Positions 414 through 60,874 of a DNA stretch of 64,000 nt are shown one piece after another. Location: contig NC_068991.1 in NCBI RefSeq assembly GCF_001194135.2, positions 77,067,413 to 77,131,412 on the forward strand, read 5' to 3'. This stretch comes from Octopus bimaculoides. Taxonomy: Eukaryota. Every line of letters starts with the position of its first letter. The first letter of the stretch is position 1. The notes below the pieces were generated by a model, which was not told the origin of the DNA, did no database searches, and worked only from the letters and a program-made list of their open reading frames with translations. A program made the position numbers and the translations under genes.

Positions 414-672
414 CCGTGCTGGTGGAACATAAAAAGCACCATCCAAACATGGTCAATGCCTGTGCCCCCTTACTGGCTCCTGTGCCAGTGGAATGTAAAA
501 AGCACCCACTTCACTCTCAGAGTGGTTGGCGTTAGGAAGGGCATCTAGCTGTACAAACTCTGCCTGATCAGATTGGAGCCTGGTGCAGCCGCTGGCTTTC
601 CAGACCTCAGTCAAACCATCCAACCCATGCCAGCATGGAAAACAGACGTTAAACGATGATGATGATAATGAT
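414..672 (+). mobile_element. Family A retroposon 3' portion (probable RTE-type tail, (GAT)n end)
   Basis: TGGTTGGCGTTAGGAAGGGCATC...CAACCCATGCCAGCATGGAAAACAGACGTTAAAC(GAT)n; the same body recurs at 7313, 10565, 52186 and in reverse at 1073, 16122, 29355. The RTE link is inferred. Confidence 0.85.
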
Positions 673-1072
673 ATGCAGTTGAATCTTACAAAACCAAGTC
701 AGATGACATTTCAAAAATATATATAACCATGTAATTCACTCATAATTATAATTTTGATTGAGGAAAAGCATAAGTTATATGTTGCTGGGGAGTAAATGAC
801 ATAAACGTTTTTTAACCCCTATATTTTTCTTGTAAGGATTCAATTGGTTTTTCAGAAGGATGAATGGAAAAGTGAACTCTAGTGTAATTTCAGCTCACAC
901 CAGAGTATGAAAATTTCAAGACTTTGAATAGCTGAAACATTCAGTTCAGTTTTGTGTTGTTTATGTCACTATAACAATGAAACAGTGTAAATAAATGAGT
1001 TGACAAGGTGTTAGAGAACCAGGTAAGAAGCCTGCAAATAGTATTTTATTGTGTTCTGATGATCTCACCGAC

Positions 1073-1376
1073 TTCATCATCATCATCATCACCGTCATGC
1101 TAGCATGGGTTGGACGATTTGACTGAGGACTGGTGGACCAGGAGGCAACACCAGGCTCCAATCTGATTTGGCAGAGTTTCTACAGCTGGATGCCCTTCCT
1201 AACGTCAACCACTCCGGGAGTGTAGTGGGTGCTTTTACGTGCCACCGGCACGAGGGCCAGTCAGGCGGGTACTGGCAACGATCTCGCTCGAATGTCTTTT
1301 CACGTGCCAGGAAGGCAACGTTGGTAACGATCCACGGCCACTCTCGAAATGGTGTATTTTACGTGTCACCTGCACA
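1073..1376 (-). mobile_element. Family A retroposon
   Basis: Reverse complement of the family A body with a (CAT)n tail at 1073-1090; three GTGCNGGTGNCACGTAAAA-like subrepeats at its 5' end. Confidence 0.88.
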
Positions 1377-1414
1377 AACTGTTGAAATTCAGTTCACTCA
1401 GATGTGAGCAGATA

Positions 1415-7312: not shown

Positions 7313-7552
7313 TGCGGGTGGCACATAAAAGACACCATTTCGAGCGTGGCCGTTTTCGTGCGGGTGACACGTAAAAGCACCCACTACACTCTCTGAGTGG
7401 TTGGCGTTAGGAAGGGCATCCAGCTGTAGAAACTCTGCCAAATTAGACTGGAGCCTGGTGTTGCCATCCGGTTTCACCAGTCCTCAGTCAAATCGTCCAA
7501 CCCATGCTAGCATGGAAAGCAGACGTTAAACAATGATGATGATGATGATGAT
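7313..7552 (+). mobile_element. Family A retroposon, young, 5' end lost in gap (N 7237-7312)
   Basis: Nearly identical to the copies at 10565 and 52186; (GAT)n tail. Confidence 0.9.
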
Positions 7553-7899
7553 ACATATACATATAAATATATGAATTTAAAATTTTATAAAATTTTTAAC
7601 ACCTTCTCTTCTCCATCTTTAATTGTTTATAAAGGATGCGTGTTCTATAAATGCTCATAACATACTTTATACTTGTAACATTTTCATATTTAAAAAAAAT
7701 ACAATAGTAAGATACCAATTTAATTTGAAGAATCTTTATTAGAAAGCTAACTTCGGAACCCACTCAAAGCAAAAGATGAAATAGAACTCAACCTTTTCTC
7801 ATATATATATGCTGACACCCTAAACACTAAGCCACATATATATATATATATATACACGCCATCTTCTGCTTAGATTAATGGGGGGTCATATGGGTGCAT

Positions 7900-8640: not shown

Positions 8641-10564
8641 ACAATGTGAATGGAGAAGCTGTTGTTGTTTATTGTTTCCAGTCAGAATTTCGTATCTAGG
8701 AGTAAATTGTTTTGATGAAACTTTCTGTCCTCAATAGAAAGCACAATTATTTAGAACTACTGTTTATAGTTGAGATGTTTGATTGTCAGTTTATAGTTGA
8801 GATGTTTGACTGTCAGTTTTTTTATTATGTGTTTGTGGTGAATAAAAGTTCAAAAAAGCATAATAATTTTAAATGTTTGTTAAAAACTGCTCCAGAATTA
8901 ACAACATTCCACATTAAAAATGAAGTATTTATTGCAAAGAATGCAGAGTTGAAATATTTCTTTTTTTATGAAATTGACACTAACAGAAGGTTGACTGTAT
9001 AATTTGAGGAATTTTTAAATGGCTAAATTAATTTTAAAAAAGGTTTAGAATAAAAGTTTGCTATTTAGCTACATTGGAGAATTGGAAAATAAACCTCTAC
9101 CTTATGATCTAAACTGGAATATCTTATTCTCCAAAGCTAATAAATCCTACATTAGAAACATGCAAGAAAAAAAAATGTGGGAGGTTGCATGTGGGAGGTT
9201 GCATGTGGGAATGTTTGGAAATCTTAGCATCAGTGACTTAACCTTAAATACACATTCTGAAAGGATTTCATCCCTCATACACATGGCTTTTAGGATTTTA
9301 CAAAAATTTTAAGCATATTAATTACCTCTACCACTAACATTACTCTGTCTTTCTTTGTTTTCACCTTTACATTTCAATCACAGGATATATATAATTATTT
9401 ACTCTCCAGTTAGCCATGACTCCTCTCATAAACTCACCATCTTCATTCATTCTTCCTCATTGTATAATCTTAATTCCAAATTTACACTTTTCTGTATAAA
9501 TTCCTTCTACATATTTATTCGACTTTGAACACTTTTTGTCTTACGTATTCCTTTTCCTAATTACTCTCCCATGGTTCCCGAACTAATTAAATACATTATT
9601 TCACATCTCTAAATTCATGTGCATTATAAAATTATCTGAATTTATTTTACTTGTTTATTTAATTTTGATCTCCCTTTCCAATTACACTTTCATGGTTCCC
9701 TAACTAATTAAATACAGTATTTTTATATCCTTAAATTGATCTATTACAATTTGTTTTCATATCCTTGCAGAGTTGGTCAATTTATATATACTGGAGCCTG
9801 AATTGATCTTTTTCTTCTGATTAACATAATTAAATCATGATTACAATGTACTACCCCTCCTACAAATTAAGTTACCACACTATAGCTTTAATATTTTATC
9901 TAATATTTTCTCATATCCTTGTTCCTGTAAATCTTAATTAATATGCTCTTTCACATTTTTCATCCCTCTTCCTATTATAACTTCATCAATGTTATTAGAC
10001 TTACTTCCTTTGTCACTGCCTTTCTCAATCTATTACCTTTCAATTTAAATCTAACAACATAATAAAAAAAAAAAAAAAAGAATTTAGTTAACCTTTTTGA
10101 GTCTATTCATCAAAAATATTAAGTCTACCTTTTAAATAAATGCCTGTTTACCTCTTAGCTTCATATAAATTTTGTCAAATTCATGAATCTTTTATGTCTT
10201 GTCTATATTTTAATCATATACACCTTTACCGTTTAGCTTTACTTCTTCAATTAACACCTTTCAACTTTTTATCTAGATAGAACCTTTTATCTAAAATAAT
10301 CGTCAATGTATCATTTACGTTCCCAGTCATATAGTTTATACAGTATTATTGTTCCAACTCACTTTAGTTTTACTTTCTCAATTATTACCCTCAAATCCTT
10401 ATTTAGACAGAATTCAAACCCCTTAAATAATAAATTTTTTTCTTATATTTTTAACGAATACACTTTAATTTATTTATTTGTACCATTCTTGATTTTCTTC
10501 ATAAAATTGCAATATTTTCTCAATATCGCCTAATCCTTTAGAATTTTTACCATTCAATATTGTT

Positions 10565-10689
10565 TTAGGAAGGGCATCCAGCTGTAGAAACTCTGCCAAA
10601 TCAGATTGGAGCCTGGTGTAGCCATCTGGTTTCACCAGTCCTCAGTCAAATCGTCCAACCCATGCTAGCATGGAAAGCGGACGTTAAAC

Positions 10690-10719
<30 letters not shown>
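10565..10719 (+). mobile_element. Family A retroposon, 5'-truncated, young
   Basis: Family A body and (GAT)n tail. Confidence 0.9.
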
Positions 10720-10720
<1 letters not shown>

Positions 10721-12703
10721 AATTACATATACATTACCATCTTTATATTAATTAATATTTACTCTTTATTAAATATCAAACGTTACTTTGTCTGGTAAAA
10801 TCTCTTACATCACTATTCAAATAAGTTATTCCCCTTGTACTAGTTATCTCGTGGTTAGATTTAGGAACACATCCAATGTTATTTCGAAATCAGTTTTATC
10901 CTCTTTTTCAAAATTATCCAAAACGTTCATCACACCACCTCCTTCAGTTTTCTTTTCTATTCTGTTTATGTTCACAGAATTATATTATATGTTGTTTTTA
11001 TTTGTCCAAAATTCCAAGAAAATGACTCCTGAACAAAACAGACAAAAGAAACACAAAGTTTTGCATATTAGTTTAAAATTAGAATGGAGAAAAAAAAAAG
11101 AGGAATGTTTTACGTTTTGGACAGTTTCTTCTTCATAAAAAAAAAGCAGAAAAAAGAGAGGAAAGAAAGAATAAAGAAAAGGAAGTGAGAAAGAAAAGAA
11201 TTACATGGAGTGGGATTGATTGTGTTATTAGTTTTGTAAAATGCTGTAAGTGGATGGTTGAAGAGAGGAAATAGAGGTAGTACAATGGGTTTTGCAGCTA
11301 AGAGAACAAAAATAAATGGGAGGCAATGGGGGAATGAGTTGTATGTGTGTGTGTGAGTTACGCCATGTGTATATGTGTATGTATATTTGTATGTTTATGT
11401 TGTGTGTTTGAGTATATTGTGGTAGTGTGGGGTGTGCACAGCTGCCATAGCTGACACAACCTGTATGTGTTTGTATTTTTGTGTGGGTGTATAGCTGAAG
11501 GAAAGATGGATATTTAACCCTTGGAGTAAAATTGATCTAAGGTAAAAGATAAATTTTAGCTTTTGTCAGACTGTTGAAACCAGGATGAATACAGAAAAAA
11601 GAAGAGAGAGAGAGAAAAATTACATGGAGTGAGATTGATTGTTTATGGAGAATTTGTGGTGTAAAATGACAGTCAAAATGGAGAGGCATTGACCTATGGT
11701 TAAACGAGCAGAAATGGTGGGAAATTGACAATACAGTGTTGTTTAATCAGGCTTCAAAGTAAACCTAGACAAGGTTAAGATTTTGTAAGCAGAATAGAAG
11801 ACAAAACTTTGCTACCTCAGAGAAATGTGCTTGCTATGCAGAAATGAAGTTGATAGAAATTCTAGAATAGTGGAATCACAGGCAGACTTTTAGTAAAAGT
11901 AGACTTTGTATGTGGCAGGTGAACTTGTTCATAACAAGAACACTTACTAAATAATTAAACACATCAAGAGAGCAGTCGTACATTATCCACTCCTTGTACA
12001 CAATAATACATAACTGAAACCTTGAAAAATTTGAACAAAAACTAGGTTTTGTAGCCTCCGATGATCTCTTATAACAAACTTATAACACTACCCAAATCTG
12101 CATTTTTGCAGGATGAGGAAATGCCTTAGATCTGGTGAGTTGCCAATTTTCTAACAAAGTTCAAATATGACCCACTTTGGAATAAGGGAGTGCTACATAC
12201 ACAAGCAACCTAGGCTGCATTAAATAAAAGTATATTTAGCAGATTGGGAGCATGTTACAACTGGCTGACAGATGCACTGTTTCTTTTCTCTGTCTGTTAT
12301 TTTCCAATTACAATGGGTTCTCTTCATTTCAACTAAAAGCTACATAACTCTCCTCTCTATGTTCATTCGCACAAATCTCTCCTCTTTTCATGATTACTGT
12401 GTCTTTATTAAAGACACAGTATTATTATTACAAAATCTTTTCAATCATTTTTCACCTGATTATTTCTCTTTAAATTTCCATTGCCATTCATCTTTTACCT
12501 AAAAAACATCAAACTACAGGAGTTCAGGCTTGATACTGCCATAGGTTAATGATAAAATTTTTGCTTTTATTTTTACTTTTGATACTTTACTAAACTTGTT
12601 ATCTAGTGATTTGCAAAATCTTTAATTTTGATGTTAGCTTACATTTGTATTGATAACTTAGCTTTAGATTTTAAATAATCTCTCTCTATCTCTACACACA
12701 TAT

Positions 12704-16168: not shown

Positions 16169-16253
16169 GTCATTTAACGTCTGCTTTCCATGTTGGCATG
16201 GGTTGGATGGTTTGACTGAGGACTGGCGAGCCAGAATGCTGCACCAGGCTCCA

Positions 16254-16255
<2 letters not shown>
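16122..16255 (-). mobile_element. Family A tail fragment
   Basis: (CAT)n followed by TTTAACGTCTGCTTTCCATGTTGGCATGGGTTGG. Confidence 0.85.
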
Positions 16256-16340
<85 letters not shown>

Positions 16341-29354: not shown

Positions 29355-29762
29355 CATCATCATCATCACCATCATCGTTTAACGTCCGCTTTCCATGCTA
29401 GCATGGGTTGGACGATTTGACTGAGGACTGGTGAAACCGGATGGCAACACCAGGCTCCAATCTGATTTGGCAGAGTTTCTACAGCTGGATGCCCTTCCTA
29501 ACGCCAACCACTCAGAGAGTGTAGTGGGTGATTTTACGTGTCACNNNNNNNNNNGGCTCCAATCTGATTTGGCAGAGTTTCTACAGCTGGATGCCCTTCC
29601 TAACGCCAACCACTCAGAGAGTGTAGTGGGTGATTTTACGTGTCACCCGCACGAAGGCCAGTCAGGCGGTACTGGCAACGGTCACGCTCAAAATGGTGTA
29701 TTTTATGTGCCACCTGCACAAGAGCCAGTCCAGGGGCACTGGCAACAATCTCGCTCGAAAAT
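29355..29762 (-). mobile_element. Family A retroposon, young; contains a 10-N gap with duplicated flanks
   Basis: Reverse complement nearly identical to 7313-7552. Confidence 0.9.
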
Positions 29763-30569: not shown

Positions 30570-30740
30570 TATGTATGTATGTATGTATGTATGTATGCAT
30601 GTATGTATGTATGCATGCATGTGTGCATGTATGTATGTATGTAATGTATGTATGTATGTAANNNNNNNNNNGTAATGTATGTATGTATGTAATGTATGTA
30701 TGTATGTATGTATGTAATGTATGTATGTATGTATGTATAT
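30570..30740. repeat. (GTAT)n tetranucleotide repeat with a small gap
   Basis: Directly visible. Confidence 0.92.
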
Positions 30741-30749
30741 ATGTTCGTT

Positions 30750-31385
30750 CCTCCAGCTCCCCAGCACTGCTTTGTCCTAGCCTCTGCTAACTATATCATT
30801 GCTGTCCTGCCACACCCCTATCCACCCATGCTCACCATTTGCTACATTCCCCTTTCCCCCCTCCCTCTATTTTCTAGTCTCTTCTTAAACTCCTTTGATC
30901 GCCTTACTCACTCACCCTGCCCAGTCCACTGTGCCACTCCACTTACATTCACCTCCCTGAGCCTGAGGGTATTCCCTGGCACAACTTCACTACCACCCCA
31001 TTTCTCTCTCTCTTTCTGTCTGTCAGTCTGTCTCTCTCTCCTCTGACACTTGTACCCATGTATCTCCTCTACAAAAAGATACCTGCTTCTGTCCCTCTAT
31101 CATAGCTTAACCTTTCATCCCCTGGCATACAGCCACCTCTCTCAATACTATTCTTCTCTTAGTTGAGGAATCATTGTCTTTGTCTTGCATATCATTTGGT
31201 GACCTCACCCATGCTGGTGCCATATAAAAAGCACTCAGTACACTCTGTAAAACAATTGGCTTTGGGAAAGGTTTCCAACCATAGAAACCATGCCAAAGCA
31301 GTCAGAAGAACTTGGCACAGTCCTCTGGTTAGCCAGCTCCTGTCCAACCATCCAGCCCCTGCCAATATGGGAAACATGGTCATTA
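30750..31385 (+). mobile_element. Long family A-related copy (CT-rich body + diverged A tail)
   Basis: AGATACCTGCTT...AACCTTTCATCCCCTGGCATACAGCCACC (31077-31140) is homologous to the reverse complement of 39935-40000; A-type tail at 31200-31380. Confidence 0.65.
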
Positions 31386-31469
31386 TATATATGTATTACA
31401 AGAGAAAAAGAGAGGGAAATAAACTGTTTTCCTCTTCTGTAGGTTTTACTAATTTGGTGTCCTTAGTAC

Positions 31470-34284: not shown

Positions 34285-34596
34285 ATTCAGACAAATACAT
34301 AACAAAAACACCAGGACTTACAAATATATATAACATACAGAAAATTGCACTACTGGGTACTGCACACATTCTATGCAAAGCACTTTCAATACAGTAAACA
34401 TAAGAGCACCACAGCAAACCNNNNNNNNNNAACATACAGAAAATTGCACTACTGGGTACTGCACACATTCTATGCAAAGCACTTTCAATACAGTAAACAT
34501 AAGAGCACCACAGCAAACCACAGCACATACCCAAGGCGCACAGAGCTGCGCTCGGTAGTGAAGTGAAAGCACGTTATAAAAATAAAACTACTGAAC

Positions 34597-35060: not shown

Positions 35061-36540
35061 ATCTTAGTATGATGGTTCATGAGAATTTTGGTGGTGTGTA
35101 CATATTAATGTTTTTGCTGGCTTTTATCTGGTATACTCACATTACTCACGTGTTGCTATGTTGCATTTGTGAGTGTGTGTTGGCAGCATCTATATTCTAA
35201 ATGCTTATTATGTATGTTATGAGATACCTGAATGGTTTATTTTGTCCTGGCTTATTGAGGTATATTATAGATTTGAAGGTACTATTCTTGGGGTTCAGTT
35301 TTATGTCATTACAATATAAATGTCATGTGTGATAATTTTTTTAGCACGAACATGTTTTCTTTGCTGTTTGTGTCATACATAAATATGTTAGACTTCTTTC
35401 ACAACTCACATGCATACACATGTTATATAAATATCCGTGCACTCTAAATATGTGTATGTATATTAAGCTTATGTTTTAGATATATTTTCATGACATATTC
35501 ATTTATATTTGCATGTGCATACCACACACGCACACTCAAATTCACACACATACACACAAATTCACACACATACACAGAAATTCACACACATACACACACT
35601 CTTGTATGAAGGAAAATGAAACTTTAAAAGAGCATGTCAACCAGCTGACACAGCATGCTTTTCACTGCAGTGCTGTGCATGGATTACCTTAACTGTCTTT
35701 CTAATAATATCCATACCACACTGTCAAATTAGTTGTTCTTATACGTGAACCAGAGTGTTTGGCTTTGTTTGTTGCAAGGTGAATAATGAAAAGATTTGCA
35801 AGGACAACATATTTATGTGAAATTTTGTTTCAGATGGAGAAAACGTTTTACAGGGACTTGTTAAATGTTGAATCTGGTTTATGAGGAGGATTGTTATCAC
35901 TAGTATTACCAGTGTTTCAAATAAAAAACATTCACCAAAGGTGATCCCTTATTTGGATAGCTTTCCATGACAATGGGCAATATCACATTGATAAGGTTCA
36001 CGCTGGCATCATTGAAAATCATTGCATGACTCTCTTTGAAATTTCTAAATATACAAGAATCTGTAAAAGTCTGTGACATATGATTTTAAAATGAAAATTA
36101 AAGATTTAACATATTTATTATAGGTATGTGCATATTTGTCTATTATCAATGTATTACACTGTTTGTATCTGTTTTCTTTTTGTTTTTTTTCCTCCCTTCT
36201 GTCTTTAGTCGTCATGTTGTGTGATGTGGTGGTGGGTGTTATTGTTCCATTCGTGTTTTCTGTTGAGGCTTGGTTTATCTATTGCTATGTGTGTAGCCTC
36301 TGTGACCTGTCTAAATGTCGTGTCAGTTCTCTGCATTGATAATACTTTAATCTCACGCATCCACCACCACACCACATGACGATTCGATTAAAGACAGAAG
36401 GGAGAAAACCCCCTCCCCAAAAAACCTACAAACAGTGTAATACACACACAATAGACAAATATGCACATACCTATGATAAATATAAGAAATAGAAATATAT
36501 ATTAAAAAAAACTGTATAAAGATTTAACAGATTGCTGCTG

Positions 36541-37606: not shown

Positions 37607-38360
37607 ATCCTCCTCATCATCATCAACGTCATTATTTAATGACTATGTTCACTGCTGGCATGGGTTAGATTGTTTGACAGGATTCAGTGGGCCCTAGGTC
37701 TGCATTGTGCCACAGCGTCTGCTTTGGCATGGCTTTTACGATGCCCTTCCTAACACCAGCCACCCTCCATCATGCAGTGGGTGCTTATCTTTGTGTCAAT
37801 AGCACTAGTGAGGGGTGCCATGCAGGTTGAAGAACTACAAACCCTATAGGAGCAACATTATTCTGGGAGATGAGGAATAAAGAGAGGTGAAGTAGAGAGA
37901 AAAAGGTCTGAGGAGAACAGGTTTCTAGTTGTGGAAGAGCTACAAGGCTACTCACATTTTAGATGGTGGGTGTGATCAGGTGGAGCTGGGAAACAATAAA
38001 AATAGTGATGGTAGAGCCTCAAGGAACGAAGTAGGCAGGAATGGTTGGAGCAGAGAGATACAGCTAACACAAGAAGGATGAAAGAAAGATGACATGATGG
38101 GTCGGTTGCAGAAGTGGATGGGGAAAAGAGAGGCAGGTGTACTGTATGAGGAGGATGGAAGGTATGGTGGGAGGGGAGAAGATGTGATTTGGTGGGTCAG
38201 TGGGGGAAAGTGTAGATGGAGTGAGCTGTATTAATGGGTAACAAGTGTAATGGTTCTGAGTTGTAAAAAAAAATACATGGTATCAAAGAAGAACTGCAGT
38301 TAGGGAGGTAATGGGTAGTGGTTGTGATGGTTGGGTGTCTTGAAGAAGAATGAAATTAGA
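37607..38360 (-). mobile_element. Long family A-related copy, old
   Basis: A-type tail (GCTGGCATGGGTTAG, GATGCCCTTCCTAACACC) followed by a ~550-bp GA-rich body on the plus strand. Confidence 0.6.
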
Positions 38361-38512
38361 TAAAGAGCCCTATGTTACATACACACTCACACACTTCTAC
38401 CAGAACTCTGCCAGTTTCTACCAGTGGTGGATGTGTCTTCTCAAGAATTCTCATCAATCATTCCAGTCTTTTCTCATCTCTTCCATGAAGTTCAAGAACC
38501 TGGGATCAGCCA

Positions 38513-38548
<36 letters not shown>

Positions 38549-39640: not shown

Positions 39641-40624
39641 AGCATCATCATTTAATGTCCATTTTTCATGCTGGTATGGGTTGGACGGTTTGAAAGGATC
39701 TGGCAAACGACAGGGCTGCTCTGAGTTCAAGTGTCAGCCTTAGCATGGTTCCTAAGACTGGATGCCCTTCCTAACACCAGCCACATTACAGTGTGTGTAC
39801 TGGGCGCCGCCTGTACGTGCCATTGGTACTAATGAGGATGCTGGGTAACTTACAAGGCAGGCAAAAGAGGAAAAGGAGAGAAGCCTCCCACTACCGTCTG
39901 TGTGTGAGGGGGGAGTATTTGAGAGGGGGAAGGGGTGGCTTTATGCCAGCTGTTGAAAGGCTTAAAGTACAATAAAGGGTCAAGCATAGGTATCTTGATA
40001 TGGAGGAGGTACATGGCTGCCACACATATAGGGGTGGGTGGAGGTAGTTGGGGGAGGAGATAAAGATGGTAGTGATGGCATTCTCAAGGTATGAGAAGAA
40101 GGTGAGCATAGGAGAGGATAGAGACAGTGGATCGGGGGGAGGGGAGGAGAGCGAGGGGGGAGAGTAAGAGATGGTTGGAGATGAGGGTAGAAGTGAATGT
40201 GATGAAAGATGAATAAGGGTGGAGGCACGGTTGATGGGAAATATCAGTAAGGAGAGAGAGAGAGAGAGAGAGAGAGATAGAAGTGGTTGAGGAAGAAGGT
40301 AGGGAGGTGATGTGTAAGGTGTAGGAGTTGTGAGGAGGAAGATGTAAAGGTACTTAAATGTAGCCCTAGGGAGTTGGGTGTGGTAGTGGATATGAGAGGG
40401 TGCTGAGAATGAAAGCGGGTATGTGGTGTTGAACGGAGTATTGCAGAGGAGAGATAACTGATGGCACAGGAAAGAGATGATTGGTGCAGGTGGGGAGAGG
40501 AGAATAATGGAGGAAAGGGATGTAATTGGTGTCAGTGGGGAGGAGACAAGTGGTAGGGCAAAGAAAGAGGGACGAGTGGTAGGTGCCAGTGCGACTGTCA
40601 AGTTGTGCCATAGATTGAGGAGCT
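39641..40624 (-). mobile_element. Long family A-related retrocopy (~1 kb; CT-rich body, A tail)
   Basis: Tail CATCATTTAATGTCCATTTTTCATGCTGGTATGGGTTGGACGG...GGATGCCCTTCCTAACACC; body homologous to 30750-31140. Confidence 0.75.
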
Positions 40625-40709
40625 CTACCACCGAGATCTGCACCTGCGGTCGGCTTCACCCGGGCTTGCGCCCGTGGCTTCCATGCGCACTGCGGCACCC
40701 TCTCACTCG
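40625..40709 (-). rRNA. 28S (LSU) rRNA fragment, 85 bp, non-functional insertion
   Basis: Minus strand CGAGTGAGAGGGTGCCGCAGTGCGCATGGAAGCCACGGGCGCAAGCCCGGGTGAAGCCGACCGCAGGTGCAGATCTCGGTGGTAG aligns to the conserved metazoan 28S segment CGAGTAGGAGGG...GAAGCC...GCCCGGGTGGAGCCGCCGCAGGTGCAGATCTTGGTGGTAG (recalled from memory); a GC/CpG island in AT-rich flanks. Confidence 0.88.
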
Positions 40710-41889
40710 AATGATGCAGTGCTGGGTGTCAGGAGAAATGAAATACAAGCATATAGAGAATGCTTTTAGGACATCATTTTTGCAGTGGTGGATGGGCCTT
40801 TTAGAGCACAGCAAACTGCCAATCACCTCGGTCCTTTGTCACTTCCTCTGAAATGTGCAGCATCTTGAGACCAGCCTTCACTTCTTTGTCCCATGCATAG
40901 ATGTATATGTATAATAACAGTTTGTTACAGATCCACATTAATTTAAAGTTTTGTTGGCACAGAGCATATCCATATCATCAGATGCTCAGAGTTAGAATGA
41001 AGGGAATTCAAAAGGGTTTCTGGGTTAGAGTATTTAGGCCACCACTGATCAGTTCATGTCATGGGGTTGTTTTAGTTATCTTATTGGTGTCAGGTCTTTG
41101 ATTGGAAGAAGACTAGATTTTGGCATTGAGCAGTGTGTGATAGATGTTTCAACAATGTCAGTTCTTACATTGCATGTTACGCATGGCAGAGCAGTCAGAA
41201 TGTTGGTAACAGACAGTTTTCAGCAACAACAGTTCCCACATGAGCAGGTAACCAATTTGATGGTGTCATGTTGCATATGAGTTTGTGTGACCAGCTTGAG
41301 CGATCGTAGGATGTAATCTCTGCAAGGTGCAGGGATTTTATATATATCTGCCATTGTGTGTGGGCCACATAGGTCTAGAGTACTACTTTCTTTCATTTAT
41401 CCACTCACTCCACTCATATACATATATATGTTAGAGGGACACTCGTAGTCATTTGAAGCTTTCATGCCTCTATTGCCACACACACACATGACTTCCATTG
41501 CAAATTTTGAACTGAATTAACTTATTTGGGTCTTGTTTTAAAATTTTTATAGTTTTAAGTAAAACAGACTGAATTTTGCAAGGTATTTTATAATGATTGA
41601 TTTTGCTTTATACGTAGTGACAAAAGCCCTGCTCTGGGTGTTCACCTAGTGACTGATGAGAAGGGATTATGTATGTGTGTGTTTATGTCCTCAACTCACA
41701 GACAGAAAGTGTTTTATCTATTTATTAATCAGTTTTTATGAATTAGAAATTTACAAATGGATAATTGAAAACAGAGAAGAGGAGAGAAATGATGGAGAAG
41801 ATGCAACCAAAAAGACAGAGTAAAAGATGGATTGTGTTAAGATAAATTAGAATGTGTCTCTTCTAAGAAATAGTGGAAAGAGGGAGAGA

Positions 41890-47042: not shown

Positions 47043-47994
47043 CTACCAGTGTCCCAAGTTTGAAAGTGTTTTGTTAAGAAAACAAGTGGCGCCCGCCAAA
47101 TCAGAAAGATCCTCTTTGTCTGCTACTACTAAACCATGTTTTCTAGCTTCTATTACTCTGAATGTTAAAGTCCCACAACATCTTATATTTTTTTTACTTT
47201 CTACTACTTTACTAGTTTCATGTTCATACCATTTATCAGTGTGGTGAAATCCTAGCGTTCTACATAACTCCCAGTGGATTATTCTCCCTAGGTTGTCATG
47301 TCTTTTCATGTATTCTTTCTGTGCCAGCATGCTACATTCACTTACTACATGAGTAACACTTTCTCTTTTGATTTACATAATCTCCATTGGGAATTTGTCT
47401 GGTATCTGTCTATCTTAGTTAATTAGCCAATTAGTCCTCAATGCTTGATCTTGTACTGCTACTAACAAACTTTCTGCCTCACTTTTCAGCTTCCCTTTCT
47501 ACAACCATAACCATGTCTAACTATTACTATTTCCTGCAACTATTTTTGGGAATCTACTCGGAAAAGCCATCTCTTGCCAGTCAGATAATCATTCTTCTTT
47601 TTTTCTGGTTTTTAACTTCATTTTTCATTCCCCCCGTGTACTACTATGACTCTAGCAGCTTTTCATAAACTGTCGTCACCTTTACCCACATAGGAGTCTA
47701 TATCTACTCTAGCTAACTCCACACAGTCTTCTACTGATATTAACTCTTTACCACCTTCCTTTCTTGCTACTCCTGTTCTTGGATGAGGTTCTCCATTCAT
47801 ATTGAATTCCTTCCTAGTTCTTCTGTCTTGATTTCTTAATTCAGATTTTGTCCAATTTACAAAAGCTGCTGAGTATTTAAGTAGCAATACTGCCCAAGTA
47901 TTTATAGCCTTTATTAGCTTCCTTGCCATTCTGATATACTCCTTCTCAATTTCTCTTTTCATTTTTCTAGTTAATACTCTGTCAGATTCTATTA

Positions 47995-47998
<4 letters not shown>
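47043..47998 (-). mobile_element. R4/Dong-like LINE fragment (RT thumb, CCHC, start of RLE), pseudogenised
   Basis: IKAINTWAVLLLKYSAAFVNW..RKEGGKELISVEDCV; WLWL*KGKLKSEAESLLVAVQDQALRTN; THVVSECSMLAQKEYMKRHDNLGRIIHWELC..KWYEHE. The 5' truncation abuts (AAT)n. Confidence 0.92.
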
Positions 47999-51620: not shown

Positions 51621-52185
51621 TAGTGAAAGATTACTGATAAATCAGTATATTGAACAAAAATATCTTGTGATGCTTACCTTTTTTAAAAAGCAGTCAATAA
51701 AATTAATAGTAGATGAAGTATTGGGACCAATGTAATTGATTAAAATGACTAAAGGAATACTCTTGTCTGGCCACAGTCCAAAGACTAAAACCAGAAACAA
51801 ATTAAAAGAATGATTATATGAATAACAACATACATATCGCTCTTATAATAAATGCTGTTGAGTATTTATATATTTTGTGTCACACAAATATAGGTTTACT
51901 GGAGTTATTTCCCTTGGTTATTATACACCCTTTCCCTTTTTTGGCATAATTTGAAAATGTGATCCTCTGGCTACTGATCATGCTTTCATGTTAACATTGA
52001 CTTTTCTTGCCAAAAGTTTTTAAGAAGCCATTCTGACATATGAAGGTTATAGTGCTGTTCCGTAATGAAATTCCATCATTTCTCATGCATACCTATCAAG
52101 AAATACCAAATGTAGAACTCCCTTATACCAGTCACTGTGTTTTATCAAATAAGATAAGATATGTATATGCATATATAAATATATA

Positions 52186-52320
52186 TGGTTGGCGTTAGGA
52201 AGGGCATCCAGCTGTAGAAACTCTGCCAAATTTAGATTGGAGCCTGGTGTTGCCATCCGGTTTCACCAGTCCTCAGTCAAGTCGTCCAACCCATGCTAGC
52301 ATGGAAAGCGGACGTTAAAC

Positions 52321-52359
<39 letters not shown>
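52186..52359 (+). mobile_element. Family A retroposon, 5'-truncated, young
   Basis: Nearly identical to 7396-7552; long (GAT)n tail; inserted in an AT-dinucleotide patch. Confidence 0.92.
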
Positions 52360-53211
52360 ATATATGCATGTATGGGTACAAGACGTCACCAACTGTAAAC
52401 AACATGAAGTCCAAAAACAAGCGAGTTAAATATGCAAACAGTGAGAGAAAAAGAATTGAAAACAGGACAAGTAACACAAAGAATGACCCTTCATCAGTTG
52501 TTGGCTGTCTATCTACTCCTCATTTCGAGCATTCAATGACAATATGAGTCTTCAAAGACAGTTGCTCCCATAAATTCTAAAATAAATTTCGAATTTTATG
52601 GAGGGTCAAAGCTGGGAACAGAAACAGGACAGTGGAGACATACGAGGAAACCAATTGAAAGCAGACATGGAGAGTCATTAGCCCAAAATGAGGGGTAAAT
52701 TAGTGAACACTGGAAGAAATATAAGAAAACTGTACCATGTTTCTGTGTAGGAAGTAACAAGTGTTCAGCTTCCCAAAATTTCATCCAGTTCCTGTGAAGT
52801 GTGATTTTGTGAAAATAATATACAAACTACGGAAGGATTACTCCGAGGAAGGTGTCACAAATGCTTGTGATATACAGTTTATTTTGATCTTCCAAGAAAC
52901 ACTGGTAGAACTTACTCATCAAAACATCCACCAGATACAAACTTAGTATACACTCAACTTAATTATTTAGGAAGAAAAGAGAAAAGTTTCAATGTAGTGA
53001 GAATTAGCTGTCCAGTAGATGTGAACATCTAATATTAAATTAGAAAAAGAACATTTATTAGAAATTGCTGCTAAATTTACACTGACTGTTTCTTGAATAT
53101 AAAATTAAGATGAAATATTAAAATTTTTCCAAATTTTCTTTTTTATTTGAGTACAGCTTTAATCCCTGACGTCATCATTGCCATCGTCATCATCATCACC
53201 ATCATTTTTAG

Positions 53212-59670: not shown

Positions 59671-59884
59671 CACACATATACACACAAATATATGTATGTG
59701 TGTGTATGGGTATATATGTGCACACATATATACTCACACACACACACACACACGTGTATATGTTTACTTTGGTTCTACTCACCACTGATTTACATTCATA
59801 GGTTCAAAAGAAGCAAAATGCCTGGCTAGATAATATACTGCCCTCACCAGTTCATAGATCTTGAGTTCAAATCCCCCAAATATA

Positions 59885-60148
59885 TTGTGTTGAGTCAAAA
59901 GTTTTGCTATATTTTCGTAGCTTATGGCTCACTTCCTGCGCTTACAACACTTCATCAACCAAGAGGAGGTGGAAGCTTCAGGGAAGAAGTTCTTCTCCTC
60001 AAAAGACAAGAACTGGTATAAGCTTGGGATCAAAGAACTGGCAGAAAAGTGGCTTCAGACAGTGCAACATGATGGCCCTAATTTACGATGCTTGATGAAT
60101 AAAACAAAGAAGTTACCAAAATATTGCAAAACTTTTGACTCAACACAA
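59885..60148 (+). mobile_element. Internally deleted mariner (MITE-like) with intact TIRs
   Basis: TA|TTGTGTTGAGTCAAAAGTTTTGC...GCAAAACTTTTGACTCAACACAA|TA (perfect 23-bp TIR plus TA TSD); the inside encodes a transposase C-terminus MAHFLRLQHF..FFSSKDKNWYKLGIKELAEKWLQTVQHDG. Confidence 0.93.
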
Positions 60149-60874
60149 TATTTCATTGTTCACATATTTCACTAAGCTGTTTTGAATAGGTGGTAAAACT
60201 TTTGGAAATATTAGCTGTAAGCTGGATGATAACCATCCATCTGTTTAATGCCATTCAACCAGATTTTAAGCCTATTATTTGTAATGTCTCATTTCCATTC
60301 TAGTGGGAAAATCTATTTTAACCCAATGGGCATCAATTGTAATTCTTTTCTACTGCTACACATGACCTCTTCTTTTCTGAATTTGAATATTATATTTATA
60401 CTTAAATCCCTGTAGTAACCTTGCTTCTCCATCATCTGCATCTTATAATATGTCCTTACACTCCCTTCCAAACATTCTGATGTCCTTCTCTCTTCAGAAC
60501 TATGTTTGTCTCTTCCAGACCAGATTTCCTCTCCTAATATGAATCTTAATAGTTAAGCCTGAACATTAACTCTAAGACGGTTATAAAGTAATTTTAATTC
60601 ATTACTAATGAAGAGTTCTGAAGACTAATGACTACTAAAAAAAAAAAAGTTTTAGCAAGGTTTCATGCCTCAGTTTGTTTCAGTTAAAACATATGAAAAG
60701 AAAAAATTGTAGATTTTTATGGGGATATTAAATCATGACAATCAGTCATAGAAATGAAGCGATTCAGCCGATATTCAAAATTTGGTGATGCCTTGTTTTG
60801 CCAGGTGCCTTTATTGATGTACAGTATTCATTGCAGTTACTTAAATGTTAATCTTCTAACGAATTTTAAACAGC

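What the first reader, a model, noticed from the sequence alone, without database searches (positions are those of the whole stretch)
39641..40709. 28S rRNA fragment fused in sense to the 5' end of a ~1-kb retrocopy: possible rRNA-LINE chimera or 28S-headed SINE
Seen: on the minus strand an 85-bp GC-rich piece matching 28S rRNA (40709-40625) runs directly into a CT-rich body and a family A (GAT)n tail, all in the same orientation. The 28S match stops sharply at both ends. Homologous long copies at 30750-31385 and 37607-38360 show no 28S piece, though they may be truncated before this point. Established: LINE reverse transcriptases can switch templates and fuse abundant RNAs (U6, rRNA pieces) to the 5' end of truncated copies, and 28S-derived SINEs are known from vertebrates. 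Inference: this is either a one-off template-switch chimera or one member of a 28S-headed retroposon family; I do not recall one described from cephalopods. No convincing TSD was found.
Basis: partly seen in the sequence, partly recalled or inferred. Interest (0 to 1): 0.75.

Follow-up and report, generated by a model that had tools for sequence, protein, structure and literature searches.

The report
28S rRNA scrap inside a retrocopy
About 90 bases of large-subunit ribosomal RNA really are embedded here, but they sit inside an old LINE-type retrocopy rather than at its head, so this looks like a one-off patch of an abundant RNA and not a new 28S-headed mobile element.

Summary
The 28S match is real. 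On the minus strand, window 40712-40622 (core 40709-40625) matches Rfam LSU_rRNA_eukarya positions 1375-1464 (32.4 bits, E 8e-7). It is in sense with the CT-rich body and the (GAT)n-tailed 3' end, and it stops sharply on both sides.

The repeat family continues upstream of the piece:
- 40877-40783 aligns with copy B (38512-38422): z 6.5-7.7, 0 of 500 shuffles.
- 40754-40716 aligns with the 5' end of copy C (30731-30770): z 7.4, 0 of 500 shuffles.
- The upstream part ends in a 29-codon frame that looks like a LINE ORF2 C-terminus, with its stop at 40803-40801.

So the piece lies about 90 nt into the 3' UTR of a ~1.25-kb copy (40890-39643). Copy B spans that point and lacks the piece; copy C appears to span it too. 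The piece occurs once in the 64 kb.

No target-site duplication (TSD) flanks the piece or the whole copy. The piece keeps all 9 CpGs (observed/expected 0.96). Its flanks are at 0.10-0.44 and the window at 0.26, which suggests the piece arrived later than its host.

Most likely it is a locus-specific, RNA- or DNA-templated patch. A three-part template-switch chimera or a subfamily module remain possible. Interest is low to moderate.

The parts
40801..40890 (-). 5' end of the retrocopy. A 29-codon open frame plus a taa stop (DKEVKAGLKMLHISEEVTKDRGDWQFAVL*) that looks like the C-terminus of a LINE ORF2. It abuts a TA-rich stretch (40895-40925).
   Evidence: Translation. 40877-40783 aligns with copy B 38512-38422 (score 19, z 6.5-7.7, 0 of 500 shuffles; BLAST E 4e-6). 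The ORF2 reading rests on my recall of the DRxxW-type C-terminal motif and was not tested.
40713..40800 (-). Proximal 3' UTR of the retrocopy, directly upstream of the 28S piece.
   Evidence: 'catccaccactg' and 'atttcatt..gacaccca..catca' are shared with copy B. 40754-40716 aligns with the 5' end of copy C 30731-30770 (score 17, z 7.4, 0 of 500). Family homology is traceable to 40716. The 6 nt at 40715-40710 (ATCATT) are unassigned.
40622..40712 (-). 28S (LSU) rRNA-derived piece in sense with the retrocopy. Core 40709-40625. It corresponds to the conserved block and hairpin just 3' of the D7a expansion hairpin.
   Evidence: Rfam LSU_rRNA_eukarya 1375-1464, 32.4 bits, E 8.1e-7. Boundaries. rDNA-antisense ORFs hit only this stretch. 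GC 66%, 9 CpG, CpG o/e 0.96. Only one copy in the window.
40584..40621 (-). 38 nt of unassigned sequence between the 28S piece and clearly family-like sequence. It could be filler or family sequence that copy B lacks.
   Evidence: No LSU match. No significant match to B or C. Placed as part of the insertion relative to B by eye and by the global alignment. Weak.
40020..40583 (-). CT-rich body of the 3' UTR, including (CT)15 at 40281-40252.
   Evidence: Composition C 43%, T 32%. TRF. Only weak collinear matches to B (40345-40279 vs 38185-38110, E 0.002) and to C.
39808..40019 (-). Pre-tail segment shared with long copy C.
   Evidence: 40016-39931 vs 31056-31140, 74-76% identity, E 1e-11. 40016-39650 vs 31056-31388, E 2e-23.
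39643..39807 (-). Family 3' tail, shared with long copies B and C and with the young SINE-like copies. It ends in a short (GAT)2.3.
   Evidence: BLAST to about 10 copies in the window at 67-75% identity. Alignments.
37607..38512 (-). Comparator copy B. Same layout (ORF2-end-like segment, CT-rich body, tail) but no 28S piece.
30745..31385 (+). Comparator copy C. It appears to start about 30 nt upstream of the point where copy A carries the 28S piece, and it has no 28S piece. Possible 9-bp TSD TATATATGT.
   Evidence: An alternative weaker placement of its 5' end downstream of the piece exists.

Best explanation
An old, CpG-poor copy of a LINE-type retroposon spans minus-strand 40890-39643. It consists of the last ~29 codons of ORF2, a ~1.1-kb pyrimidine-rich 3' UTR, and the family tail ending in (GAT)n.

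About 90 nt downstream of the stop codon it carries a locus-specific insert. The insert is an ~88-91-nt sense copy of 28S rRNA from the conserved block and hairpin just 3' of the D7a expansion hairpin, possibly followed by ~38 nt of filler.

The most likely history, which is inferred and not shown, is this. The retrocopy was already in place. Later a break inside it was repaired with a short templated patch copied from ribosomal RNA (through cDNA) or from rDNA. That left no target-site duplication and no tail of its own.

The piece has no function. It is not the head of a mobile element.
For: Shown:
- The piece is 28S with sharp ends.
- Repeat-family sequence continues upstream to within 4-6 nt of it.
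- Copy B spans the site without it, and copy C appears to.
- It occurs once in the window.
- There is no significant direct repeat around the piece (136 of 1000 shuffles do as well) or around the whole copy. The piece has no tail of its own.

Support for 'later than its host':
- The piece has 9 CpG, o/e 0.96. The flanking parts are at 0.10, 0.44 and 0.28, and the window at 0.26.
- Among the SINE-like copies in the same window, consensus CpGs are lost roughly 7 times faster than other sites: about 86% kept at ~1% divergence and about 43% at ~11%.
- Copy A keeps 1 of 6 tail CpG sites, with 4 now TG or CA.
- Its (GAT) tail is only 2.3 units, against 7-13 in young copies.
- 15 of 17 pairs of the 28S hairpin are still canonical.
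Against: - The CpG-poor state of the LINE parts may have been inherited from its master rather than acquired at this locus, so the age gap is not proven.
- Sense orientation is required by the RNA-chimera models. Under break repair it is only a 50% outcome.
- The piece starts right after the D7a hairpin, where protostome 28S is naturally cut. That would fit run-off at a natural RNA 5' end during reverse transcription.
- Up to 5 of 39 positions that are highly conserved in the Rfam consensus differ, which sits badly with a very young age. At least one of them (CUC) is a natural variant elsewhere.
- No empty or orthologous site and no genome-wide count could be obtained.
Confidence: 0.45

Rival explanations
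1. Three-part chimera made during retroposition. The reverse transcriptase, or an RNA ligase acting beforehand, joined the 3' part of the LINE RNA, a short 28S fragment, and the upstream part of the LINE RNA. The mosaic was then inserted in a single target-primed event.
For: - The piece is in sense orientation, as this model requires.
- 28S/LINE-1 chimeras are documented in primates: n=18, 50-482 nt, 83% sense (bioRxiv 10.1101/2025.02.02.635956).
- Double template jumps giving tripartite chimeras are documented in Magnaporthe (PMC2104539, title and abstract).
- The piece begins directly 3' of the D7a hairpin, where the protostome hidden break creates the 5' end of 28S-beta. That would fit run-off at a real RNA end. 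This is a lead only.
Against: - It needs two switches that land back on the LINE at about the right place.
- The piece keeps all its CpGs while its host is strongly CpG-depleted, has a shrunken tail and has no TSD.
- The position of the break in this species' own 28S is not known.
Confidence: 0.22
2. The 28S segment is an inherited module. A LINE, or a ~1.3-kb non-autonomous derivative, captured it in its 3' UTR, and copy A is one of several or many copies that carry it.
For: - Copies A, B and C are only 60-75% alike and differ by many indels, so A may come from a subfamily not otherwise sampled in this 64 kb.
- A and B start at the same family position, which hints at a defined element rather than random truncation.
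- TEs carrying rDNA pieces are known, for example SINE28 and Pokey (PMC10946416).
Against: - There is no second copy of the piece or of either junction in the window.
- Two long relatives lack it.
- No junction-spanning ORF turned up in two library-wide protein searches, and there were no junction hits in metagenome contigs. All three are weak negatives, because this genome is not indexed there.
- Full CpG retention argues against long propagation in a CpG-depleting germline.
Confidence: 0.2
3. One reading: the 28S piece is the 5' terminus of the retrocopy, either as a U6/L1-style template-switch head or as the head of a 28S-derived SINE.
For: Sense orientation and sharp ends. The phenomenon is known in mammals (SINE28, PMC4994717).
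Against: Family sequence lies directly upstream: A vs B z 6.5-7.7, A vs C z 7.4, 0 of 500 shuffles each. It includes an ORF2-end-like frame. No TSD starts at the piece.
Confidence: 0.04
4. Artefact: a chance GC-rich look-alike, or an assembly mis-join that pulled rRNA-derived reads into this contig.
For: The assembly has N gaps and exact duplications around gaps elsewhere in the window.
Against: - E 8e-7 with a contiguous match to 90 model positions and a preserved hairpin, plus independent protein-level hits.
- There are no Ns near the piece.
- The piece differs from the consensus at several positions and both flanks are unique sequence, which is not what a collapse onto rDNA would give.
Confidence: 0.04

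Closest known systems
[quoted passage not shown]
   Same: A short 28S fragment (there 50-482 nt) joined in sense to LINE sequence. An abundant non-coding RNA copied by, or alongside, a LINE reverse transcriptase.
   Different: In primates the rRNA piece is at the 5' end of the truncated L1 and the whole unit shares one TSD. Here LINE-family sequence continues upstream of the piece, no TSD is detectable, the host is a different LINE type with a (GAT)n tail, and the piece comes from a different part of 28S.
Tripartite chimeric retropseudogenes from double template jumps (Magnaporthe grisea, PMC2104539)
   Same: Three segments joined head to tail in one orientation, with LINE sequence at the 3' end.
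   Different: Those join different cellular RNAs. Here the two outer segments are parts of the same element, so the reverse transcriptase would have had to return to its original template. This was not shown here.
SINE28, the 28S-derived SINE of mammals (PMC4994717)
   Same: 28S-derived sequence inside a retroposed element.
   Different: SINE28 is a multi-copy short element built from 28S sequence. Here there is a single copy in the window, the piece is not at the head, and the host is ~1.25 kb of LINE 3' end.
Templated or filler insertions at repaired double-strand breaks (from my own knowledge; no paper read here)
   Same: Short insert copied from an abundant RNA or distant DNA, with no TSD and no poly(A) or tail, sometimes with extra filler of unknown source.
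   Different: No empty allele or microhomology could be demonstrated here, so the resemblance is by exclusion.
rDNA-specific LINEs (R2, R4 and relatives)
   Same: LINE sequence physically joined to 28S sequence. Dong-R4 elements are abundant in Octopus vulgaris (PMC13282606).
   Different: In those elements 28S flanks the element at its target site. Here 28S is enclosed by element sequence, lies in a non-rDNA, AT-rich context, and comes from the D7a-proximal block, which from my recollection is not among the known R-element target sites.

Membership tests
5' template-switch LINE chimera (U6/L1 type, 28S/L1 type) | The foreign RNA piece forms the extreme 5' end of a 5'-truncated LINE copy | tested here: not met
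   Family homology lies upstream of the piece: 40877-40783 vs copy B and 40754-40716 vs copy C, 0 of 500 shuffles each.
5' template-switch LINE chimera (U6/L1 type, 28S/L1 type) | The piece is in the same orientation as the LINE | tested here: met
   Rfam hit on the minus strand. Body and tail are on the minus strand.
5' template-switch LINE chimera (U6/L1 type, 28S/L1 type) | One TSD flanks the whole chimera | tested here: inconclusive
   No direct repeat above shuffles (694 of 1000 do as well). Even young copies of this family sit in TA-rich repeats with ambiguous TSDs.
28S-derived SINE / 28S-headed retroposon family | Many copies share the same 28S-to-body junction | tested here: inconclusive
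   There is one copy in 64 kb, and the long relatives B and C lack it. No junction hits in metagenome contigs or the protein libraries. The species' genome could not be searched.
28S-derived SINE / 28S-headed retroposon family | The 28S part is the 5' head of a short (<~600 bp) element | tested here: not met
   The piece lies ~180 nt inside a ~1.25-kb copy.
LINE/SINE family with shared (GAT)n-ended 3' tail ('family A') | 3' tail homologous to the other copies and ending in (GAT)n | tested here: met
   39807-39643 matches about 10 copies at 67-75% identity and ends in GATGATG.
LINE/SINE family with shared (GAT)n-ended 3' tail ('family A') | The long copies derive from an RT-encoding LINE | tested here: inconclusive
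   Only a 29-codon ORF2-end-like frame is present. There is no RT domain in this copy, and the clade was not determined.
rDNA-specific LINE (R2/R4-like) carrying target sequence | 28S sequence flanks the element's ends at a fixed rDNA target site | tested here: not met
   The piece is enclosed by element sequence on both sides. There is no other rRNA match in the window at Rfam gathering threshold.
Templated/filler insertion at a repaired break | Short insert without a TSD or a tail of its own | tested here: met
   Flank repeat not significant (136 of 1000). No A-rich or (GAT)n run follows the piece.
Templated/filler insertion at a repaired break | An allele or orthologue exists that carries the host sequence without the insert | not testable with these tools
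No cephalopod genome collection was available.

The most novel reading that the evidence does not exclude
The piece is the 5'-terminal ~90 nt of 28S-beta, the fragment created by the protostome hidden break in the D7a loop. In this reading it was stitched at the RNA level, by ligation or end-to-end template jumping, into a broken LINE RNA that then retroposed. Natural rRNA processing ends would then feed directly into LINE-mediated genome change in a cephalopod, possibly recurrently.
Probability: 0.12. Interest if true: 0.55.

Novelty: new member of a known kind. Interest (0 to 1): 0.25.

Why it matters
This finding corrects a tempting reading. There is no evidence here for a 28S-headed SINE or a classical 5' chimera in a cephalopod.

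What remains is a clean example of rRNA-derived sequence ending up inside a retroposon copy in an invertebrate genome. Such events have mostly been catalogued in mammals.

If genome-wide searches showed recurrent insertions starting at the same 28S position, just after the hidden-break hairpin, it would link rRNA processing ends to reverse-transcriptase template choice. As a single locus it has no functional consequence.

Tried and rejected
- Rfam at gathering threshold on the whole window and at E-value threshold on 1.6 kb found no LSU hit. The hit needs the stretch cut to the piece.
- Extending the 28S match: by eye the 38 nt after the piece resembled the next 28S bases. Rfam gave no support, and comparison with rDNA-derived ORFs gave about 40% identity, which is chance level. 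Rejected.
- Exact look-ups of two ORFs across the piece were not on record.
- A word-indexed protein search with the antisense ORF found nothing. A full HMMER search of representatives found only rDNA-derived ORFs over the 28S part and one low-complexity hit.
- A metagenome scan for the 3' junction gave 0 hits. A scan for a 17-mer of the piece returned only bacterial chance matches.
- I tried to sample the same genome through a LINE ORF in the window. It gave 3 distant hits, and loci L121-L123 carry no family-A repeats.
- A search for host exons, to fetch an orthologous locus, found no convincing exon among ORFs of 70 aa or more.
- TSD searches around copies A and B and around the piece were not significant.
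- ARAGORN found no tRNA-like heads.
- The octopus H88 break (PMC13321053) is in a different part of 28S and is not relevant to this piece.

Full report
**What is there**

Read on the minus strand, window 40712-40622 is a GC-rich (66%) island in an AT-rich window (34% GC).

When the stretch is cut to the piece, Rfam places it on LSU_rRNA_eukarya positions 1375-1464 of 3401, at 32.4 bits and E 8.1e-7. The conserved run GUGCAGAUCU(C)GGUGGUAG and a hairpin with 15 of 17 canonical pairs are both present. Whole-window and 1.6-kb scans miss it, because a short internal fragment of a 3.4-kb model is only scored when the ends of the stretch allow truncated alignment.

A separate HMMER search of 1.8 billion representative proteins used the antisense ORF 40462-40848. 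Apart from one low-complexity hit, it found only ORFs that are read off rDNA. These matched query residues 50-84 only, which is the same ~90 nt.

The match does not extend 3'. Extending the stretch 5' lowers the score to 23.7 bits.

**The surrounding element**

The last ~165 nt (39807-39643) are the family tail. It recurs about ten times in the window at 67-75% identity and ends in (GAT)n.

Several short copies are nearly identical to each other, carry long (GAT)7-13 tails and are CpG-rich. These are recently active SINE-like elements. Three long copies share more than the tail:
- copy A, the finding;
- copy B, 38512-37607, minus strand;
- copy C, 30745-31385, plus strand.

**The piece is internal, not terminal**

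Upstream of the piece, A 40877-40783 aligns with B 38512-38422. The local score is 19 against a mean of 9.7 for dinucleotide shuffles (z 6.5-7.7, 0 of 500; BLAST E 4e-6).

A 40754-40716 aligns with the 5' end of C, 30731-30770 (score 17, z 7.4, 0 of 500). In C this segment runs straight into the body and tail with no 28S sequence. A weaker alternative placement of C's 5' end exists.

In the A/B global alignment, family similarity ('atttcatt...gacaccca...catca') runs to within a few bases of the piece.

The upstream segment contains a 29-codon open frame ending ...EEVTKDRGDWQFAVL*, with its stop at 40803-40801. It resembles LINE ORF2 C-termini, but that is my recollection and was not tested.

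The copy is therefore about 1.25 kb (40890-39643), and the 28S piece lies about 90 nt into its 3' UTR. The piece occurs only once in the 64 kb. B spans the site and lacks it.

**Junctions**

Family homology is traceable to 40716, and 28S homology starts at 40709. Six bases (ATCATT) are unassigned.

On the other side, 28S ends at 40625-40622. The next 38 nt match neither 28S nor B or C.

No direct repeat flanks the piece: the best candidate is 12 of 15 matches, and 136 of 1000 shuffles do as well. None flanks the whole copy either. There is no A-rich or (GAT)n run after the piece.

**Relative age**

CpG observed/expected values are as follows:

| Region | CpG o/e |
|---|---|
| Whole window | 0.26 |
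| Upstream part of copy A | 0.10 |
| Body | 0.44 |
| Pre-tail plus tail | 0.28 |
| 28S piece (9 CpGs) | 0.96 |

Within this window, the SINE-like copies lose consensus CpGs about seven times faster than other sites. About 86% are kept at ~1% divergence and about 43% at ~11%.

Copy A keeps 1 of 6 tail CpG sites, with 4 now TG or CA. Its (GAT) run is only 2.3 units.

These observations suggest the piece has resided here for a much shorter time than its host. The caveat is that the LINE lineage may already have been CpG-poor when A inserted.

Up to 5 of 39 positions that are highly conserved in the Rfam consensus differ in the piece. At least one of them (CUC for CUU) is a natural variant in other organisms' rDNA. 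The true divergence from the source 28S is unknown.

**Mechanism**

I favour a locus-specific patch. An existing retrocopy suffered a break that was repaired with a short sequence templated from rRNA (through cDNA) or from rDNA, plus some filler (confidence 0.45).

Rival 1 is a three-part chimera made at retroposition, with two template jumps or a prior RNA ligation (0.22). It is supported by the obligatory sense orientation, by documented 28S/L1 chimeras in primates and by tripartite chimeras in a fungus.

There is also an untested lead for this rival. The piece begins right after the D7a hairpin of the model. The protostome hidden break cuts 28S in that loop (PMC6925239), so the piece could be the 5' end of 28S-beta.

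Rival 2 is that the module was inherited from a subfamily master (0.20).

**Comparison with what is known**

The locus works like known rRNA/LINE chimeras or templated insertions. It fails the defining feature of 5' chimeras and of a 28S-headed SINE, which is terminal position. It is also not an rDNA-specific LINE junction.

Neither paper search turned up an rRNA-in-LINE insertion from a cephalopod, and the octopus repeat paper I read does not mention rRNA. The kind of event itself is known.

**Limits**

Copy number, empty sites and assembly correctness could not be checked.

Noticed in passing
window 7313-7565(+), 10562-10730(+), 29364-29760(-), 52183-52360(+), 1066-1400(-), 420-690(+): Young SINE-like copies with long (GAT)7-13 tails. 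Two are ~1% from their consensus and CpG-rich, so the family was recently active. ARAGORN finds no tRNA-like head.
   Followed up: partly
flanks of most family copies, e.g. 52150-52190 and 52350-52370, 16230-16330, 30672-30745, 38517-38548, 40895-40925: Copies abut TA/TG-rich microsatellites at one or both ends. This suggests a TA-rich target preference or microsatellite growth at junctions, and it makes TSDs ambiguous.
   Followed up: partly
window 40877 (copy A) and 38512 (copy B): Two long copies begin at the same family position, just inside the ORF2-end-like segment. This hints at a defined ~1-1.3-kb non-autonomous element rather than random 5' truncation.
   Followed up: no
window 29453-29544 = 29555-29646; 34332-34420 = 34431-34519: Exact 92-nt and 89-nt duplications on either side of 10-N gaps. 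These look like gap-closure artefacts of the assembly.
   Followed up: no
window 47043-47998 (-): Fragment of a different LINE ORF2 (frames of 111 and 95 aa). Only three relatives at 53-58% aa identity were found in the 5.8-billion protein library, one of them on a 4.4-Mb eukaryotic contig of an ENA metagenome assembly.
   Followed up: partly
window 59865-60172 (+): ORF fragments that read like the C-terminal part of a mariner-type transposase. Judged by eye only.
   Followed up: no
window 36104-36490: A ~390-bp palindromic element: 72-nt arms 85% complementary, plus inner 51-nt arms. MITE-like or hairpin repeat.
   Followed up: no
whole window: Strong CpG depletion (o/e 0.26), with CpG-rich islands only in young repeat copies and in the 28S piece. 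Repeat age in this genome can be read from CpG retention.
   Followed up: partly
proteins P0005-P0008 (library hits, not in the window): Spurious ORFs read antisense off 28S rDNA are present in public protein collections. They encode TTTEIC, which means the sense strand reads GATCTCGGTGG, so the 'CUC' variant of a near-universal 28S motif occurs naturally in some organisms.
   Followed up: partly
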